Shown: in pieces, positions 37,448-62,638 of the stretch
Position numbering within the stretch: the first letter of the stretch is position 1
Layout of the letters: each line of letters starts with the position of its first letter
Assembly: GCA_965113315.1 (NCBI GenBank)
Contig: OZ220367.1
DNA length: 64,000 nt
Strand: one strand, 5' to 3'
Source of the DNA: Podarcis vaucheri
Taxonomy: Eukaryota
Position numbers and translations under genes: made by a program
The notes under the pieces: model-generated
What the model saw: the letters and a program-made list of their open reading frames with translations, nothing else
What the model was told of the DNA's origin: nothing
Databases searched by the model: none

Positions 37448-50244
<12,797 letters not shown>

Positions 50245-52009
50245 GGTTACAGTGCGCTGAAGGTCTGAAAAAAGAAAAAATGGCACATAGGGAATTGGGT
50301 CAGAATCATGAAACTCAAGGGGACGCTCGCTTCAACACCACACTGCAAACAAAACCTATACAAATAGTTATGATTACATGCAGGATTTTGAGAGGGCCTT
50401 CTTACATAGACAAAGCATTTCAACACAGAAACCTAGATCCTAGTGCACTATTAAAAATTCTCCACAGAACAGCTGATATGATCTTCATGAGGTAGACACA
50501 GACTTTGCACAGCTAAGCTAGAAAACATGGGACAACACGGTAGACCCAAACCCAAGTTCCCAACCCAAGAGTCTGTCTTACATGCAACACACAACAAAAC
50601 ATACTCTTGCTAAGGTACATGCCTTTCCCATTAGGTGTGAGTTCACGCCAGGATGAGTCATGGAAAGTTGCATCACACCAAGCCTGTCAGTTAAAAGCTT
50701 TGGTATGCTTAAGTTACCTTGGGATATCTCACAGTCAACATCCAGATTTGTGCTCAGCTTATAGCAAGGCCTTTCTCAGTCCATTCCTTCTTGGCCAACA
50801 TTCTGAGGGCCACATGCCAGTGGTGCGCAGGGCCAGAGGCAAAACTGGGAGGAGCAATAGGTGTCGACCACACAAGAGTTGGAGGCTTATATCGACACGC
50901 ATACACCAACCTACATTATTGCAATTCAAGAACATATTCCAGCCAAGCAACACTCAAAGAGGGTGCAGAGAAGGGCCCGGGAGGTATGTGCCTTGTGGAG
51001 AGTCCTGAGAGCTGGACAGAGAGGCCTCAAGCTCCTAGACCTGAGGTTCCCCATATCTGACCTACAGCTTGAAGACCAGTATTGCCAGTTCTCATCACTA
51101 TGTTCCAAGCTCTGAGTCATGAAAGAACTATTGCATAGGCCCTGCATCTTGAAAACCAACATGTAAGATGCTGTGCTAGAGGATTTTCTATAGCATTTTC
51201 AATTATCAAATGTTTTTCACAGTTGGTCACATAGCAGCAGATAAAACACCATGAGAACTTAACAAAAAAATCATAATCCCAAGTGCCTAGTTGCTTTGAT
51301 TCTTAAAGTCCTGATGCAGGGATTAGAAATATTTTTCCAGGCTGCTGAACTCTACTGCAAATGTTCCCCTGTGGAGCTTTTAAAGAACAATTAATCTGAG
51401 TTACAATACAACCCTTGTCACCAGAGCATTGCAACACTGACAGCAGACAGACTAATCTTCAATATAAATAAGACCTACTTTTACCTTTCAGTATCATTCG
51501 GTTCATAAGACCAAAGGGGATTGTTGTTGTGGTTTTTTAAAAATGGTTTATGCAAGCGTTTGAAGAACTAAGCAAAACCATACATATACAGACCTCTGCT
51601 CAACCATTACTAGATGGTTCAGTCAAAAGACAGGTAATCCTATGCCATTGTGTGTGTGCTGATTAACTGCTTGTCATATTAAACATGAAACAGAATATAT
51701 TGGCCAAGGAAAAGAAAAGCTCTAAAAAAAAATATTAACTCTTCCCCCATCCTAAAAAAAAGTGACTTTACCAGATGCTTATACTCAATTTTTATAAGCT
51801 GTTTAAGGAGCATCCCTCACAGTGGAGCGGGAAAGTAAAACACATTTCTAGGAGTGAAGCCTACAAAAGCTTGATTCTTTAATGTACTTGCAAGGGAATA
51901 AGGCCCATTGAACATTGAAAGACCTGTTTCCAAGCAAACATACATAGAACTGACAGTTGTTAGTATCCTACCATTCCAGCATACAAAGATGACACATAGC
52001 TTTTCTAAT

Positions 52010-52110
52010 TCATAGAATCATAAGAGCTGGAAGGGACCCAAGGGTCATCTAGTCCAACCCCCTGCAATGCAATGCAGGAATCTCAGCTAAAGCATCCATG
52101 ACAGATGACC
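52010..52110 (-). mobile_element. CR1 LINE 3' end
   Basis: CATAGAATCATA tail and GGAAGGGACC..AGGGTCATCTAGTCCAACCCCCTG stem-loop motif. Confidence 0.75.
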
Positions 52111-52138
52111 ATGTTGTACAGGAAGAGTCAATAGCTAC

Positions 52139-52216
52139 TTCTGTTAATATTGACAGTATTCTGTTAATATTCTGTTAATATTGAATATTCTGTTAATATT
52201 CTGTTAATATGTTAAT
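52139..52216. repeat. short minisatellite (TTCTGTTAATA)n, ~6 imperfect copies
   Basis: Directly visible. Confidence 0.85.
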
Positions 52217-52428
52217 GGAGTTCCAATGTGACATTTAGAAATTTCACCCCCCAAAATAGCAAGTATTGCACTACATAAGATTTGGATAGGACCCAGATTT
52301 AAAATTGCATCACTGAAAGCTTGCAACAGGATGAACTTCTCAATGATAGGACTATACAGGCCTGGCCCACTACACACCCCTCACGGGGAGAAAAAGCTAG
52401 CTTGCTTAATTAGCATATACAAGAAATA

Positions 52429-53827
52429 CCGTATTTTTCGGCCCATAAGACGCACCGGCCCATAAGACGCACCTAGATTTTTTGGGGGGAAATAAAGGAA
52501 AAAAATTTTATTTCCCCCCCAGGTGCGCTGCGCTACACCAGGAGCTTGGGGCGTGCGGAGCTCAGCGCGCCCCAAGCTTCTGCGTGCCGGCAAGGTCTCC
52601 GCTAGCGTGGGAGAGCCGGGCGCCTCTCCCAGGGCTAGCGGACCCCTGCGCTAATCCAGAAGCTTGGGGCGAGCTGAGGTCAGCGCGCCCCAAGCTTCTA
52701 GGTGCGCGCAAGCAGTCCGCTGCCGCCCCAAGCCTCGCGCATCCGGCAGGAGGTCCCACCGGGTGCGCGAGGCTTGGGGCGGCAGCGGACTGCTCGCGCG
52801 CACCTAGAAGCTTGGTCCACTGCCGCCCCAAGCGTCGCGCACCCAGCAGGAGGTCCCACCGGGTGCGCGAGGCTTGGGGCGGCAGCGGACTGCTCGCGCG
52901 CACCTAGAAGCTTGGTCCGCTGCCACCCCAAGCCTCGCGCACCCGGCAGGAGGTCCCACCGGGTGCGCGACGCTTGGGGCGGCAGCGGACTACTCGCGCG
53001 AACCTAGAAGCTTGGTCCGCTGCCGCCCCAAGCCTCGCGCACCCGGCAGGAGGTCCCACCGGGTGCGCGACGCTTGGGGCGGCAGCGGACTGATCGCGCG
53101 AACCTAGAAGCTTGGTCCGCTGCCGCCCCAAGCCTCGCGCACCCGGCAGGAGGTCCCACCGGGTGCGCGAGGCTTGGGGCGCCAGCGGACTGCTCGCGCG
53201 CACCTAGAAGCTTGGTCCGCTGCCGCCCCAAGCCTCGCGCACCCGGCAGGAGGTCCCACCGGGTGCGCGAGGCTTGGGGCGGCAGCGGACTGCTCGCGCG
53301 CACCTAGAAGCTTGGTCCGCTGCCGCCCCAAGCCTCGCGCACCCGGCAGGAGGTCCCACCGGGTGCGCGAGGCTTGGGGCGGCAGCGGACTGCTCGCGCG
53401 AACCTAGAAGCTTGGTCCGCTGCCGCCCCAAGCCTCGCGCACCCGGCAGGAGGTCCCACCGGGTGCGCGAGGCTTGGGGCGGCAGCGGACTGCTCGCGCG
53501 AACCTAGAAGCTTGGGGCGTGCGGAGCTCAGCGCGCCCCAAGCTTCTAGGTGCGCGCAAGCAGTCCGCTGCCGCCCCAAGCCTCGCGCACCCGGTGGGAC
53601 CTCCTGCCGGGTGCGCGAGGCTTGCAGACACTCGCCCGAAGCAGGGGGAGCCCTCCCGAGGACTCCCCGTGCTTCGGGCGACAGGCTGCCGCCCCAAGCC
53701 TCGCGCCCCCGATGGGACCTCCTGCCGGGCGCGCGAGGCTTGCAGGCATTCGCCCCATAAGACGCACCCCGATTTCCCCTTCATTTTTGGAGGGGAAAAA
53801 GTGCGTCTTATGGTGCGAAAAATACGG
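52429..53827. mobile_element. non-autonomous TcMar-Tc2-type element (1399 bp) in OAT intron 1
   Basis: TA TSD; TIR CCGTATTTTTCG..CCATAAGACGCAC / GTGCGTCTTATGG..CGAAAAATACGG; subterminal CCCATAAGACGCACC repeats. Confidence 0.9.
52715..53514. repeat. 8 x 100-bp tandem array of palindromic (hairpin) units
   Basis: Unit = 32-bp arm + 12-nt loop + 32-bp inverse arm + 24-nt spacer. Hand count of one unit gives 75% GC and 13 CpG. Confidence 0.97.
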
Positions 53828-55499
53828 TAAGTGCTGGTTTTAGAAAGAGGCAAATTTATGGTTTATTAAAATACTATGAATCTAACTGCAACTGCTGTGA
53901 TACTTACTGTCACTTCCTAACCTTGGGAAGTGTGACGAGTTGCCTTTGAAACCCTTCTCATAAGGCAACAGCACACAAAAGATGAGCCAGTAATCCGTTT
54001 TGAGAATACTCAGATTTTATATTTTCTGTTCGTATATACATTTTTACTTGTACTGTAATGATTTTGGAAGAATGTTCTGAATCTGCTGATTATAAAGGCA
54101 TTTTGAATGAGAAGTAAATCCATCCAAACTGGTGCTTTCTCAGGTCCATTTTCTTATTTAATCCTTTTAGCTTTACAGCCTAGTTACCAGATTCATCTCA
54201 CTGCCAAATATTTACAGACACATCACTACATGCAAATAATGGAAACAAGGATAGTGACACACATGGGTAAAGTGCAAGAAAGCAAGGTTTTTGGGTGTCC
54301 AAAAATCCGGGGGGGGGGGGAGCATCTTAGCAAGGAAAGGACACCTGCCCAGTGGAACTGAGAATAGTCAGGCTAGAAACATACGATATTTCTTCAGAGA
54401 GCTAGCATCAGTAAACAAGAGACACTTGCTTGAGGCATATATACCCATCCCACTTTTGCCTTCTGAAACAGGTTTTGCATGCTTCATGTTGGTTTAAAAA
54501 CCCACAGAAGCCTGTTTGACAAAACCCTAGTAGGACAAAAAAAAAGTGTTTATGAGAGAGATGGAGAACTTGCAGTCCTCCAGATGTTGCTGGACTACAA
54601 CTCCAATTATCCCTTAGCATTGACTGTGCTGGCTGCAGTTGGTGGCAGTTGGCAGTCTAGCAACATCTGGAAGGCCCAATGTTCACCATATAGGGTTTAT
54701 TACATGGGTAGTAATGGTGGGAAGAACAAAACAGGAACTCTGCACAGTTTTGATTGCCATGCCTCAAAAGGAACCTTGTGGAGTTGGAAAAGATGTGTCT
54801 CTTTAAAAGCAGTTTAAACCAAATCATGGAGGATAAGGTTGACAATGATAGTTGTGTACTACTTCTGCTGTTGGATGCATTATGCCTCTGAATACCAGTT
54901 GCTGGACAGCATGAGTGGGAAGGGTGCTAGTATGCTCACACCCTGCTTGACAACATCCCATAGACATCTAGTTGGTCTTTGTGAGAGAAGCATGTTGGAT
55001 CAGATTGGCCTTTGGCCTGAACCTACAGGGATCTTCATATGCCTCTTCTAGACCAGTTTGCTCTTAAAAGCTGTAGTCTATTCCACCTCAAGTTTCCGTT
55101 GTACTGTGCCAGAAAACTACTAACAGTGCACTCCTATACATGTCTACTCAGAAGCAAGCCCCATGGGACTAATGCCTGGGTGAGTGTGCATATATTTCCT
55201 TTGCTACCCACTTTATTTACTCTCAAGGAAACCAGAAAAAGCCAGGGGCCTCCTTTAGCTGAGATCTTGTACCAGCAGGGTTTTACGGCTCTGCAAAAAT
55301 GGAAGAAGTGAAGAGGGCCATCAAGGCTCTCTAAGAAGGAGAAATGAATGATGGAGACTTATTAAACTTGGAACACGGAATACATCATAAAACAAACCAA
55401 TTGTGCGCGCGCGCACACACACACACCCTCCGACATGCAGATTTTGAAAAGGCAGAGGATGTGTGATAAGGCTTCACGTACCCACCGCAGGCTGAAGGG

Positions 55500-56280
55500 T
55501 GCTGTGCGCACATTTCTAAGCAAAGACAATCTGGGGCTAAAGCGCAGGAAGAAGCCAGGGTTTGCGCACGCCCGTTGAAGCCGGTCGGGCAAACATACAT
55601 ACACTCTGTGCATGCTCAGACACACAGCGTCCCAGTTACATGCGCCAGAGCAGCCCGCGGGTCTCCAGCGGAGCTGAGGATCCAAATTATGTTGGGGAGG
55701 CTCGTGGGAGGGGACGGACGACAAAGCAGTCAAAGGGGAAGAGAGCCAAAGGGCGCCCATAGGAGGGAAAGCGCTGCATGGCCAGGGCCTCGCTCCAGCC
55801 CGACGGCCGCCGCCCGCTTCCCCATCCTCACGGGCATGACGGGGTGCAGCAGCCGCGGAAGGGGGTCTCTCCGAGGGAACAAGCAGGCGGCCGGCCGGCC
55901 GACTCCTCCCCACGCCCACCGGGCCTCCCTCCCACCGCCGCGCTACCTTCCCGATGCGACTCTCCTCCGCTCCGGCGAGAAAGGGCAAGCGCGGCTTCCT
56001 CGGCCGCCTGTCACAGCTCAAAAGACCGGCCACGTCACAAGCCCCCCCTGGCAAGACGCGCCGGCGCCGGCGCGCCCCATTGGCCTCCCCTGCACGCCGC
56101 GCCCAATCACGGCGCGGCGAAGGCGCCTCCCCCGGAAGAGCTCGCTCGCTATGAGCTGCCTGCTTGTCCCCACCTCTGCCGCTCATTGATCCTCTTCGGT
56201 GCATTCCTAGCGCCGCTCTCGACCAATCAGGGTTTGCGCGTAGGATTCTTTGGGTTCCTCCTGGGCGCCTCGCTGCCTCT
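55500..56280 (-). promoter_or_regulatory. OAT: OAT CpG-island promoter
   Basis: CpG-dense tract 5.7 kb upstream of the first coding exon. CCAAT boxes at ~56079, 56103 and 56223; CRE/ATF-like TGACGTG (56031-56037 minus); ETS-like CCGGAAG (~56132); no TATA. Confidence 0.8.
55947..56020 (-). other. OAT: probable OAT non-coding exon 1 (5' boundary approximate)
   Basis: Donor-like GGGAAG|GTAGCG at 55947/55946, just downstream of the promoter motifs. The first coding exon has an acceptor upstream of its ATG, so an upstream exon is required. Confidence 0.55.
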
Positions 56281-56892
56281 TTCCTTCTTGCCTTTCCGAT
56301 ACAGATTAATGATCAAGCCTACCTAAAGCATCCGTGATAGATGGCCATCCAAACTCTGCTTAAAAACCTCCAAGGAAGGAGAGTCCATCACATGCTGAGG
56401 ATATTAATTTTGTCTAGACATATTTTAGATAAATAAGGCCCTGTATGTTCAGTTGATTAGACTTATTCCTCCAATGGTAGGTAGTTATTTCTAGATCCAG
56501 ATTTTCTTGGGCACCTGAGTTTAAAAGAAGAAGGGGAAAGTTCCACAAATTTGAAAGAAACCATAGAAAAGGAGGAGTTGAAGTGCAAAATCAATGAACG
56601 GAATAAGCGTTCAACACCCTTCCCGTTTCCTGTTCCTCTGAGGCTGCTTTTCTCTAGGAACAATGACAGGGTTTTGCCACACGTTCCTGTTTCTGCACTT
56701 CAACTCCAATCTCATCTTTTTTAAAATAAAAAAACCTGATCCAGAGATACATTCATAGAGAATGGGTAGCTAAATCCAAGGCTAAAGAAAGATGATAGGA
56801 ATACCAGCTGGTGGGGACAGATAAGAAGCAGAGGTGTGAATAGGAGAATGGGGACAAAACTAGAATTTAGGTGGCTCTGGCTCTGCCAACTA

Positions 56893-60470: not shown

Positions 60471-62638
60471 CAGTGGTGCCCCGCAAGACGAATGCCTCGC
60501 AAGATGAAAAACTCGCTAGACGAAAGGGTTTTGCGTATTTTGAGCTGCTTCGCAAGACGAATTTCCCTATGGGCTTGTTTCGCAAGACGAAAAAAATGTC
60601 TTGCAAGTTTGTTTCCTTTTTCTTAAAACCGTTAATACCCAGGGTGCATTGCTTGAAGAGGTGCAGTTGCGACTTGACTTCGAGGAGCAACTCATAGCAC
60701 GCGGTGTGGTAGCCTTTTTTGAGGTTTTTGAAGACTTTGTTGATTTTTGAAGCTTTTCCAAAACTTCTTTTGCGGCCATTTGGCAAGTTAAACTTTTAAA
60801 ACTTTTTTGGGGGTTTTTGGATTTTGGGTTGGGGTGTTTGGAATTCAAGGACTTGGTGTTGGGGAGGGATTTGCAAGAATCTGGAAGCTTGGTTTTTTTC
60901 ATGCATTTTTATGACTTTTTGTGACCATTGGGCCACTCTGCTGTTTTTTTAAAAAAAAAATTCTGGGTTTGAATTTCTGTGTGGTGGGTGGCTGGGGGAA
61001 CAGTTGAGGAGGGGTTTGCAAGAATCCAGAAGCTTGTGTGGTTTTTTCCTGCATTTTTATTATTTTCTGTGTCCATTGGGCCACTCTGCTGCTTTTTTAT
61101 AAAAAAAATTCTGGGTTTGAATTTCTGTGTGGTGGGTGGCTGGGGGAACAGTTGGGGAGGGGTTTGCAATTTCTGTGTGGTGGGTGGCTGGGGAAATAGT
61201 TGAGGTTTTTGAAGACTTTGGTGATTTTTGAAGCTTTTCCAAAACTTCTTTTGCAGCCATTCGGTAAGTTAAACTTTTAAAACTTTTTTTGGGGGGTTGG
61301 ATTTGGGGTTGGGGGGTTTGGAATTCAAGGACTTGGTTCTGGGTTTGAATTTCTGTGTGGTGGGTGGCTGGGTGCTTTTGAATTTTTTGGATGTGAAGCA
61401 CTGTTTTTTTTGGGGGGGGTTTACGAAGGTAGGAGCTGTGCTGCCATGGCACCCAAGAAGACTGCTGCTGCAGAGGCTGGCGAGGGGAAGAAGGCGAAGG
61501 TTACGCTGGAAATGAAGAAGGAGATCATCCGGAAGCACGACGGTGGAATGCATGTGACAGACCTCGCCAGGGAGTACGGGAGGAATCCATCGACGATCGG
61601 GACCATCCTGAAGATGAGGGAGAAGATCCTTGCGACTGATGCAGCCAAGGGAGCCACCAGGATCGTGAAGAACTGCCCAGCTGTTCTGGAGGAGGTGGAG
61701 AAGTTGCTGCTCATCTGGTTAGAAGAGAAGCCGTGTGCAGGGGACACAGTGACTGAGGCCGTCATTTATGAGAAGGCCAAGGCCTTGCACGCAGACCTCG
61801 TCCGGGAACAGCCAGGAACCTCAGGCGAGCCAGAAGTCTTCAAGGCAAGCAGAGGCTGGTTTGACCGGTTCAATACAAGATCTGGAATCCACAGCGTGGT
61901 CAGGCATGCACCAGAGTCAACAGTGGTGCAGGACATTGTTTCCTTGGGGAGGACCATGGGCCTGTAGGTCACAGAGGAGGATGTCAGCGAGCTGGTGGAG
62001 GAGCACGACCACGAGCTGACCACCCAGGAGCTTGTCGAACTGCAGGCAGAGGCTGCGCAGGAGCAGGCCTCGCTGGAAGAGGAGGAAGCAACTGAGGAAC
62101 GGCTGTCCTCCAAAGAACTGAGGGACATTTGCCTGAAGTGTAAGGATGTGCAGGCTTTTACACAGTGGCACCACCCTGACAAGCATGTGGCACCTGACCT
62201 TGCGAACACTTTTGATACGAGGGTCATGTCGCCTTTCAGGGAGGTGCTGAAAAGGTGGATGAAGCAGCAGACCATGGACAGGTTCTTCAGCAAGAAGCAA
62301 AGAGTGGAAGAGGAACCTTCTTCGAGTTGACCCCCAGAGTCTTAGAAAATGTACTGTACACTTTGTTGATTTTTAAATGTTTTTCTGTCATGTTTAGAAA
62401 CTAAATTTATTGTTCCTTCAATTTTTGAAATGCTCTTTACAGTATGTGCGACTTTAAAGAGCACTTAATAAACTCTTGTTGTACCAAATTTGGCTTTGTT
62501 TGGACTTTTTTTGACCATAGGAACGCATTAATTGAATTTCAATGCATTCCTATGGGATTTCGTGCTTCGCAAGATGAAAAATTCGCTAAACGAAAAAACT
62601 CGCGGAATGAATTAATTTCGTCTTGCGAGGCACCACTG
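60471..62638 (+). mobile_element. Tigger/pogo DNA transposon, internally deleted (2168 bp)
   Basis: TA TSD; TIR CAGTGGTGCC(C/T)CGCAAGACGAA; transposase remnant inside. Confidence 0.93.
61446..62330 (+). pseudogene. Tigger transposase remnant: CENP-B-type HTH domains fused in frame to the C-terminus, DDE domain absent, one TAG at 61965-61967
   Basis: GCCATGG Kozak. ..VTLEMKKEII..VTDLAREYGRNPSTIGTILK (psq/CENP-B HTH), EVEKLLLIWL..EKAK..FKASRGWFDRF (HTH_Tnp_Tc5), then DVSELVEEHDHELTTQEL..KQQTMDRFF. ORFs 61410 and 61995 are in the same frame. Confidence 0.9.

What the first reader, a model, noticed from the sequence alone, without database searches (positions are those of the whole stretch)
52690..53750. 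Transposon-borne array of eight tandem, pre-miRNA-sized GC-rich hairpins in OAT intron 1
Seen: an exact 100-bp period x8. Each unit is GTCCGCTGCCGCCCCAAGCCTCGCGCACCCGG (32) - CAGGAGGTCCCA (12-nt loop) - exact inverse arm (32) - 24-nt spacer containing AAGCTT. Further partial hairpins flank the array, and the whole lies inside TA-flanked Tc2 TIRs. Established: Microprocessor prefers ~33-35-bp stems with loops of 10 nt or more and single-stranded flanks, and MITEs can give rise to miRNAs. Inference: this is a mobile, copy-number-variable polycistronic hairpin cassette co-transcribed with OAT, able to yield small RNAs against its own family or to form serial cruciforms. I do not recognise this architecture from described vertebrate repeats, and it is the best candidate for an undescribed system here.
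Basis: partly seen in the sequence, partly recalled or inferred. Interest (0 to 1): 0.8.

Follow-up and report, generated by a model that had tools for sequence, protein, structure and literature searches.

The report
Lizard mini-transposon carrying hairpin-repeat array
A 1.4-kb non-coding cut-and-paste transposon, inserted recently in the first intron of a lizard's OAT gene, carries eight tandem 100-base GC-rich palindromic units; this is a real example of the known "tandem repeats inside a miniature transposon", and nothing here shows that it makes microRNAs.

Summary
At 52715-53514 there are eight head-to-tail 100-bp units with no indels, 0-4 mismatches each. Each unit is a 32-nt arm, a 12-nt loop, the inverse arm and a 24-nt spacer with AAGCTT. 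The array sits in a 1,399-bp element (52429-53827) with 27-bp terminal inverted repeats and a TA on each side.

Contigs from two sister species join 52426 directly to 53828. That is a clean empty site with one TA, so the insertion is recent and lineage-specific. The ends of the element lie three to four orders of magnitude above single-copy depth in all three species, and array-like units tens to hundreds of times above.

A second element with homologous ends (38264-39541) carries a non-palindromic 160-bp x3.5 array. The frame therefore picks up tandem repeats of any kind.

I found no support for a miRNA cluster:
- Rfam gives only sub-threshold generic hairpin matches on both strands.
- Two pairing registers are equally stable.
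- All arm substitutions break pairs and none is compensated.
- The locus is absent from sister species.
- No small-RNA data could be reached.

Tandem-repeat-bearing MITEs are already described, in Xenopus among vertebrates. This scan had already noted several similar hairpin-array elements elsewhere in this genome.

The parts
52427..52428 (.). Left TA target-site duplication
   Evidence: Sequence. Sister-species contigs carry a single TA at the empty site, joining 52426 to 53828 (table 8, records 10 and 17).
52429..52455 (+). Left terminal inverted repeat CCGTATTTTTCGGCCCATAAGACGCAC
   Evidence: Pattern search: 4 matches in the window against 0.00 expected. Summed depth is about 1e5-3e5 against about 26 single-copy.
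52439..52473 (+). Two direct 17-bp subterminal copies (CGGCCCATAAGACGCAC), probably transposase-binding repeats
   Evidence: TRF period 17 x2.1 at 100%. The same architecture occurs in the second element and in metagenome MITEs.
52543..52697 (.). Left interior: a chain of short palindromes. Two are AAGCTTGGGGCG-n12-CGCCCCAAGCTT-type modules at about 52543-52579 and 52660-52697, with a CCGCTAGC...GCTAGCGG hairpin between them.
   Evidence: Sequence; whole-element fold; alignment of the two array boundaries.
52715..53514 (.). Array of 8 x 100-bp units (32-nt arm, 12-nt loop, 32-nt inverse arm, 24-nt spacer with HindIII site). 74% GC, CpG observed/expected 0.96.
53508..53545 (.). Small palindrome at the right array boundary. 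It is the centre (53526/53527) of a 98-nt-arm palindrome that mirrors unit 8.
   Evidence: the repeat finder I5: arms 53429-53526 and 53527-53624, 96% complementary, 0 nt between them; alignment.
53563..53624 (.). Ninth hairpin copy in inverted orientation (loop TGGGACCTCCTG, the reverse complement of the array loop), with a truncated right arm
53625..53684 (.). Unrelated GC-rich hairpin (CTCGCCCGAAGCA...TGCTTCGGGCGA)
   Evidence: Sequence; fold.
53685..53742 (.). Shortened, diverged hairpin copy with inverted loop
   Evidence: match 53688-53712 with 2 mismatches.
53801..53827 (-). Right terminal inverted repeat. Together with 53752-53769 it forms a subterminal hairpin of the ATAAGACGCAC motif.
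   Evidence: Summed depth is about 8e5 against about 26 single-copy.
53828..53829 (.). Right TA target-site duplication
38264..39541 (.). Second element of the same frame, in the opposite orientation, with TA at 38262-3 and 39542-3. Its interior holds a 160-bp x3.5 tandem array (38843-39407) that does not form a hairpin.
   Evidence: The ends are homologous over about 90 bp. The unit folds no better than shuffles, z = +0.5.
50035..50331 (-). Context: stop-free stretch holding the OAT start-codon exon (MFSKLAH...). OAT runs on the minus strand, so the element lies upstream of this exon in the transcript.
55400..56300 (.). Context: CpG island, the likely OAT promoter and first exon (inferred)

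Best explanation
This is a young copy of a very abundant non-autonomous, TA-targeting cut-and-paste DNA transposon. The frame is MITE-like and of Tc1/mariner type. The element is moved in trans by a transposase that recognises the 27-bp terminal inverted repeats and the subterminal ATAAGACGCAC repeats.

Its interior is non-coding cargo: a chain of GC-rich palindromic modules. One module (arm-loop-arm-spacer, 100 bp) has been amplified head-to-tail to eight copies by replication slippage or unequal exchange. Palindromes that stall forks and allow template switching probably favoured this. The same process explains the inverted ninth copy and the mirror-image variants.

The perfect stems are a by-product of a palindromic seed unit and recent amplification, not of selection for a folded RNA. 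The element inserted into OAT intron 1 in one lizard lineage only and most likely has no host function.

Shown here: the anatomy, the TA duplication, the empty site in sister species, the family abundance, the folding and the absence of compensation. Inferred: the transposase partner, the amplification mechanism and the neutrality.
For: - TIRs plus TA on both sides.
- Single-copy-depth contigs from organisms B and E run from 53828 straight to 52426. They lack exactly the 1,399-bp element plus one TA. Flank divergence is only about 1-1.6% (table 8, records 17 and 10).
- Summed depth of the ends is 1e5-8e5 against about 26 single-copy in organism A, with similar ratios in B and E. Array bins are about 1e3-1e4 in A and are also above baseline in B and E.
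- Contigs from other copies link 52642 to 53507, skipping the array, or join the parts differently (table 5c).
- A second element in the same window has both ends homologous over about 90 bp but an unrelated, non-hairpin 160-bp x3.5 array. The frame therefore acts as a cassette for tandem repeats in general.
- The same TIR and subterminal-repeat architecture is found in 160-345-bp TA-flanked MITEs on eukaryote-like metagenome contigs.
- No ATG-started ORF of 60 aa or more lies in the element.
- CpG observed/expected is 0.96 and units are 96-100% identical to the consensus, so the array is young.
- All 8 mispaired arm positions in units 1-5 are one-sided and none is compensated in either register.
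- The architecture is a described kind: DTC84 (PMC3879986), Tetris (PMC4079207), and Xenopus Xstir and miDNA4 (PMC12628747, PMC9659126).
Against: - No autonomous partner or transposase was found, so the superfamily assignment rests on TA plus TIR alone.
- Depth sums from contigs are not copy numbers, as the tool itself warns. Abundance is therefore an order of magnitude only.
- Presence in organism A rests on the assembly itself and on junction contigs that reach only 27 nt into the TIR, below the tool's 31-nt bridging rule. X1 may also be the assembly's own sample.
- The unit count of eight could not be checked with long reads.
- Lack of function is an inference from youth and non-conservation. 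No small-RNA, methylation or expression data for the species that carries the insertion were available.
Confidence: 0.85

Rival explanations
1. Hairpin small-RNA cassette. The array is transcribed within the OAT pre-mRNA, or from other family copies. Its roughly 33-bp hairpins or longer nested duplexes are cut by Drosha/Dicer, or by Dicer alone, into miRNA- or siRNA-like RNAs that act on the thousands of family copies or on host transcripts.
For: - Each unit forms a 32-36-bp stem on either strand, far more stable than shuffles.
- The element lies inside a transcribed gene, between the likely promoter CpG island and the ATG exon.
- Palindromic MITEs have given rise to miRNAs before: Made1 gave hsa-mir-548 (PMC1784062).
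- The family is abundant, so targets would exist.
Against: - No Rfam miRNA family reaches its gathering score. The sub-threshold matches go to more than ten unrelated families on both strands, which means generic hairpin shape.
- Registers arm-loop-arm (-83.0 kcal/mol) and arm-spacer-arm (-83.4 kcal/mol) are equal, and the whole array folds into long nested duplexes with an ill-defined ensemble. There are no defined hairpins with single-stranded flanks.
- On the OAT-sense strand the apical loop shrinks to 4 nt in the minimum-energy fold.
- The stems are perfect and about 80% GC. The folding energy per nucleotide scaled by GC content (MFEI) is 1.4-1.5. From general knowledge, this is well beyond typical animal pre-miRNAs.
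- No arm change is compensated.
- The insertion is absent in two sister species.
- Bulk RNA-seq of a sister species gave 0 reads on array-like sequence. Given the DNA depth ratio of ends to array (about 200:1), fewer than 1 read was expected, so this result is uninformative.
Confidence: 0.07
2. Cis-regulatory side effect. The insertion brings an 800-bp CpG-island-like block with 16 GC-box cores (GGGCGG/CCGCCC) into OAT intron 1, about 1.6 kb from the promoter island. It changes OAT transcription, methylation or elongation in this lineage.
For: - The element is 70% GC against 43% for the window, and the array has CpG observed/expected 0.96.
- 16 of the window's 25 GGGCGG/CCGCCC motifs lie in the element.
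- Its position is near the presumed promoter.
Against: - There is no expression, methylation or binding data.
- Young transposons in vertebrates are usually methylated and silent (general knowledge).
- The high CpG content is explained by youth alone.
- The thousands of other family copies argue against a locus-specific role.
Confidence: 0.05
3. Assembly artefact in the unit count. The element and the hairpin unit are real, but the number of units (eight) is mis-assembled.
For: - Short-read contigs cannot span the array, and no listed piece covers the whole stretch.
- Palindromic GC-rich arrays are hard for every sequencing platform (general knowledge).
Against: - Units carry their own variants in an ordered pattern.
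- The bin holding the unit with three private variants (52804-52920) sits at single-copy depth, 29.9, in a run of the same species. Those variants are therefore present in reads at the expected dose.
Confidence: 0.08

Closest known systems
Tandem-repeat-containing MITEs: DTC84/pearl of bivalves (PMC3879986), Xenopus Xstir/Xmix, and the Tc1/mariner MITE miDNA4 (reviewed in PMC12628747 and PMC9659126)
   Same: A short non-coding element with inverted ends and a target-site duplication. It is high in copy number and has a central array of a variable number of tandem units. The flanking parts act as a 'cassette' for different internal repeats, and palindromes at unit junctions are proposed as hotspots of length change. 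miDNA4 is a vertebrate Tc1/mariner-type case.
   Different: Here the repeat unit is itself a near-perfect 76-nt GC-rich palindrome (32-bp arms), so the array has two equivalent pairing registers. The ends share nothing with those families. The family is from a lizard, and I found no open paper that prints its TIR.
Foldback-type transposons such as Tetris of Drosophila virilis (PMC4079207)
   Same: A non-autonomous DNA element rich in internal inverted and tandem repeats that can seed satellite arrays. The interior is largely one big nested palindrome.
   Different: In Tetris the tandem repeats sit within long terminal inverted repeats. Here the TIRs are short (27 bp) and the array is central.
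MITE-derived miRNA genes: hsa-mir-548 from Made1 (PMC1784062)
   Same: A palindromic Tc1/mariner-type MITE whose transcript forms a very stable hairpin of pre-miRNA size.
   Different: For Made1 the hairpin is the whole 80-bp element (37-bp TIRs) and mature miRNAs are documented. Here the hairpins are internal tandem cargo, GC-rich and perfect, with no small-RNA evidence and no conservation.
Tandem pre-miRNA clusters in introns or repeat arrays (primate C19MC, mouse Sfmbt2 cluster, fish mir-430); named from general knowledge, not tested here
   Same: Many hairpins repeated head-to-tail inside one transcription unit.
   Different: Those have imperfect stems, defined flanks, sequenced mature products and conservation within their clades. 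None of this is shown here.

Membership tests
Tandem-repeat-containing MITE (non-autonomous DNA transposon with an internal array) | Terminal inverted repeats | tested here: met
   27-bp TIRs at 52429-52455 and 53801-53827, against 0 expected by chance.
Tandem-repeat-containing MITE (non-autonomous DNA transposon with an internal array) | Target-site duplication and an empty site in relatives | tested here: met
   TA on both sides. Contigs of two sister species join 52426 to 53828 with a single TA.
Tandem-repeat-containing MITE (non-autonomous DNA transposon with an internal array) | No coding capacity | tested here: met
   Only GTG/TTG-started ORFs that follow the repeat period, and no ATG ORF of 60 aa or more. 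The ORFs were not scanned against Pfam.
Tandem-repeat-containing MITE (non-autonomous DNA transposon with an internal array) | High copy number of the frame | tested here: met
   Summed depth of the ends is 1e5-8e5 against about 26 in flanks, in three species. This is an order of magnitude only. There is a second copy in the same 64 kb.
Tandem-repeat-containing MITE (non-autonomous DNA transposon with an internal array) | Internal tandem array whose content or copy number varies between copies | tested here: met
   8 x 100 bp here and 3.5 x 160 bp in the second element. Contigs from other copies skip the array (table 5c).
   No transposase ORF lies next to the TIR in the window or in 31 metagenome loci. 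Repbase and Dfam are not available. A literature search for the TIR string gave nothing relevant.
Canonical animal miRNA cluster | Roughly 35-bp imperfect stem, apical loop of 10 nt or more, single-stranded basal flanks | tested here: inconclusive
   The stem length fits (32-36 bp). However, the stems are perfect and about 80% GC, and the loop closes to 4 nt on the OAT-sense strand. A second register of equal energy uses the 'flanks', and the whole array prefers nested long duplexes.
Canonical animal miRNA cluster | Match to a described miRNA family | tested here: not met
   The best Rfam score is 65.2 bits against a gathering score of 90. Matches go to many unrelated families on both strands.
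Canonical animal miRNA cluster | Conservation and compensatory maintenance of the stem | tested here: not met
   The insertion is absent in two sister species. All 8 mispaired arm positions are uncompensated.
Canonical animal miRNA cluster | Sequenced mature 5p/3p small RNAs | not testable with these tools
   No small-RNA run was offered. The one RNA run laid was bulk RNA-seq of a species that lacks this insertion, and it was uninformative for the array.

The most novel reading that the evidence does not exclude
In wall lizards one super-abundant MITE frame repeatedly breeds arrays of perfect GC-rich palindromes, with periods of about 89-119 bp at several loci. When carried into introns such as OAT intron 1, these arrays would be processed into siRNA- or miRNA-like small RNAs. 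They would then form a newborn, lineage-specific, transposon-borne hairpin-RNA system that silences its own family or rewires host genes.
Probability: 0.06. Interest if true: 0.6.

Novelty: new member of a known kind. Interest (0 to 1): 0.27.

Why it matters
As it stands, this is a well-documented case of a known phenomenon: tandem repeats born and carried inside a miniature DNA transposon. It has three useful extras. A precise empty site in sister species dates the insertion as recent. A sibling element in the same gene carries a different, non-hairpin array, which shows that the frame is a general cassette. The repeat unit is an unusually long, perfect, GC-rich palindrome.

It is a good marker locus for recent DNA-transposon activity in lizards and for how palindromic satellites arise. 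It would matter more only if small RNAs from such arrays were found.

Tried and rejected
- **Rfam**: scanned at a permissive E-value. Only sub-threshold, both-strand, multi-family hairpin matches came back, so a known miRNA or other known RNA is rejected.
- **Coding potential**: only periodic GTG/TTG ORFs in GC-rich repeats, so coding is rejected.
- **RNA evidence**: the only raw RNA run was from a species without this insertion. It gave 0 reads on the array and 0 on the unique intron flanks. The DNA ends-to-array depth ratio of about 200:1 predicts fewer than 1 read, so I count this as uninformative, not as evidence of silence.
- **Viral contigs**: 0 matches for the TIR, so nothing points to a viral vector.
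- **Metagenome contigs**: 31 contigs with the TIR. They are short TA-flanked MITEs with the same end architecture, no GC-rich hairpin array and no transposase. They show that the frame is widespread but do not settle the superfamily.
- **Literature search for the TIR string**: only unrelated primer hits.
- **Hairpin formation as a property of all arrays in this frame**: rejected, because the 160-bp unit of the second element folds no better than shuffles.
- **Whole-array fold**: the idea of eight independent hairpins was not borne out. The minimum-energy structure mixes local hairpins with multi-unit nested duplexes.

Full report
**1. Observation**

The sequence at 52715-53514 is a tandem array of eight 100-bp units. 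Tandem Repeats Finder gives period 100, 8.0 copies, 97% matches and 0% indels. Read in register, the units differ from the consensus (unit 6) by 1, 3, 4, 3, 1, 0, 1 and 1 positions.

'Exact' is true of the period and of the arms of units 6-8. Units 1-5 carry 1-3 arm positions that do not pair.

One unit folds at -93.6 kcal/mol as RNA (z = -9.9) and at -54.1 kcal/mol as single-stranded DNA (z = -10.6). The array is 74% GC with CpG observed/expected 0.96, in a window of 43% GC.

**2. The element around it**

The array lies in a 1,399-bp element, 52429-53827. Its 27-bp ends, CCGTATTTTTCG-nn-CCATAAGACGCAC, are inverted repeats. The pattern occurs 4 times in the window against 0.00 expected by chance. 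A TA stands on each side, at 52427-8 and 53828-9.

The left end has two direct 17-bp copies of the ATAAGACGCAC motif. The right end has a direct and an inverted copy that form a subterminal hairpin.

The interior outside the array is a chain of palindromes:
- three small AAGCTTGGGGCG-n12-CGCCCCAAGCTT modules;
- two unrelated GC-rich hairpins;
- a ninth hairpin copy at 53563-53624 whose loop is the reverse complement of the array loop;
- a shortened copy at 53685-53742.

The array is bounded on both sides by a direct repeat of about 88 bp (small palindrome, inverted spacer, arm; 52660-52746 and 53508-53594). The right boundary is the centre of a 98-nt-arm palindrome with 96% complementarity and no gap (I5). 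There is no ATG-started ORF of 60 aa or more.

**3. It moved, and recently**

I laid contigs of three related species and one RNA run on 51400-54900.

In organism B (X4, record 17, 1,122 bp, depth 30.8) and organism E (X11, record 10, 1,051 bp, depth 12.8), a single-copy contig runs from 54601 down to 53828 and continues without a break at 52426. These contigs lack exactly the element plus one TA. That is a clean empty site. Their flanks differ from the window by about 1-1.6%.

In organism A, the best holder of the stretch at 0.78 of the sampled words, contigs run from each flank into the TIR without a mismatch (records 3 and 7). They reach only 27 nt into the element, below the tool's 31-nt bridging rule, and this run may be the assembly's own sample. 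The filled state therefore rests mainly on the assembly.

The insertion is younger than the split from B and E. This fits the undecayed CpG content.

**4. It belongs to a big family**

Summed contig depth over the two ends is 1e5-8e5, against about 26-30 in unique flanks in organism A. The ratios are similar in B and E. The tool warns that such sums are not copy numbers, so I read them only as 'thousands or more'.

The array bins are at about 1e3-1e4 in A. They are also above baseline in B (2e2-4e4), and in most bins in E (one, 53272-53388, sits at baseline). The hairpin unit is therefore not unique to this locus or species.

The bin that holds unit 2, which has three private variants, sits at 29.9. 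This is single-copy depth, as expected if that unit exists once. Table 5c lists contigs from other copies that connect 52642 to 53507, skipping the array, or that join the parts in other ways. Interior structure therefore varies between copies.

**5. A sibling element shows the frame is a cassette**

At 38264-39541, in a downstream OAT intron, lies a second TA-flanked element with the same TIR. Both of its ends align with the two ends of the first element over about 90 bp, in the opposite orientation.

Its interior is unrelated and holds a 160-bp x3.5 tandem array. That unit folds no better than shuffled sequence (z = +0.5). The frame therefore carries tandem repeats whether or not they are hairpins.

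**6. The frame outside lizards**

The TIR pattern has no match in viral contigs. It matches 31 eukaryote-like metagenome contigs (GC mostly 36-43%) from a handful of projects.

Several of these hold complete TA-flanked MITEs of 162-345 bp. They have the same layout: the TIR CCGTATTTTTCGATAGATAACACGCACC followed by one to three subterminal direct copies of a TATAACGCGCACC-type motif. None has a GC-rich array.

No transposase ORF lay next to any TIR. TA plus TIR supports a Tc1/mariner-type frame and no more.

**7. Gene context**

Short conserved OAT motifs, followed by Pfam on the stop-free stretches, place six class-III aminotransferase exons on the minus strand. They run from the ATG exon (within 50035-50331) down to 40191-40343.

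A CpG island at about 55400-56300 is the likely promoter. The element lies between them, so 'intron 1' is plausible but inferred.

OAT-sense RNA would be the reverse complement of the + strand. Because the unit is palindromic, it folds on both strands.

**8. The miRNA reading**

Size alone fits, with stems of 32-36 bp. Everything else is neutral or against.
- Rfam gives 52 matches at an E-value of 1 or less. All are below the gathering scores, spread over more than ten unrelated miRNA families and over both strands. Any long hairpin gives this pattern.
- Each right arm pairs equally well with its own left arm (-83.0 kcal/mol, 76 nt) and with the next unit's left arm across the spacer (-83.4 kcal/mol, 88 nt). 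There is no unique hairpin with single-stranded flanks.
- The whole element folds into a mixture of local hairpins and multi-unit nested duplexes. The frequency of the minimum-energy structure in the ensemble is 0.
- On the OAT-sense strand the loop closes to 4 nt in the minimum-energy fold.
- The folding energy per nucleotide scaled by GC content (MFEI) is 1.4-1.5 with perfect stems of about 80% GC. From general knowledge, this is outside the usual range of animal pre-miRNAs and looks more like a Dicer substrate.
- All 8 mispaired arm positions in units 1-5 are one-sided in both registers. Nothing shows selection for pairing.
- The locus is absent in sister species.

The RNA-seq run (organism E, 12% of the run read) gave 0 reads on array-like sequence and about 100 on the right end. 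The DNA depth ratio of ends to array in that species is about 200:1, so fewer than one read was expected. The unique intron flanks also had 0 reads. This run says nothing either way. No small-RNA library was available.

**9. Mechanism**

The best reading is a selfish non-autonomous transposon moved in trans through its TIRs and subterminal repeats. Its palindromic interior module was amplified head-to-tail. This is inferred.

Three features fit stepwise tandem duplication with occasional template switching between palindrome arms:
- the shared variants of neighbouring units (units 3 and 4 share two; units 3, 4, 7 and 8 share the spacer C>A);
- the direct repeat that bounds the array;
- the inverted ninth copy.

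The literature proposes the same for arrays inside MITEs. It cites palindromes at unit junctions as hotspots (PMC3879986), stem-loop-mediated extension in Xenopus Xstir, and microhomology-mediated expansion in the Tc1/mariner MITE miDNA4 (PMC12628747, PMC9659126).

**10. Comparison and novelty**

The architecture is a described kind, including in vertebrates. The claim of an undescribed system does not hold.

What is particular here is the long, perfect, GC-rich palindromic unit and the clean dating by empty sites. First-stage notes, and two follow-ups in this scan, describe similar elements elsewhere in the same genome: 89-bp x6, 113-bp x24, and arrays of about 115 and 119 bp. I did not see those sequences. 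They agree with the depth evidence that the type recurs.

I rate this as a new member of a known kind, with interest 0.27. The open possibility, small RNAs from such arrays, gets about 6%.

The OAT exons were searched one by one by reference.

Noticed in passing
window 38262-39543: A second TA-flanked element of the same TIR frame lies in a downstream OAT intron. It carries a 160-bp x3.5 non-palindromic tandem array (38843-39407) plus a (GA)n tract. Its two ends match the two ends of the studied element in opposite orientation.
   Followed up: partly
window 52834, 52971, 53071: The same arm variant (index 19, C>G) sits in the left arm of unit 2 and, as its mirror image, in the right arms of units 3 and 4. 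It is uncompensated in both local registers. This suggests exchange or template switching between arms in inverted orientation, followed by unequal exchange. It is also the subject of note s1-854274.
   Followed up: partly
L001 155-328, L012 571-744, L020 2255-2416, L027 1158-1371, L016 1630-1956, L010 1095-1439: Complete 162-345-bp TA-flanked MITEs with a nearly identical TIR (CCGTATTTTTCGATAGATAACACGCACC) and subterminal direct repeats occur on AT-rich, eukaryote-like contigs of a few JGI metagenome projects. The host was not identified here. The TIR type is therefore widespread. Whether this reflects deep conservation or horizontal transfer between prey and lizard was not examined.
   Followed up: partly
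window 51985-52120 and 54559-54675: SINE-like repeats next to the element reach summed depths of about 1e5-1e6 in all three species. They are the only parts of the stretch well covered in RNA-seq (depth 200-350).
   Followed up: no
window 52139-52210: A TTCTGTTAATA-based minisatellite (periods 11 and 29) lies just upstream of the element.
   Followed up: no
window 60858-61169: Another tandem repeat, 148 bp x2.1 at 91% identity. It was not examined.
   Followed up: no
window 52244: Organism B carries an 8-bp CACACACA insertion in the flank. This and other small indels and SNPs distinguish the three species at this locus and could be used as markers.
   Followed up: no
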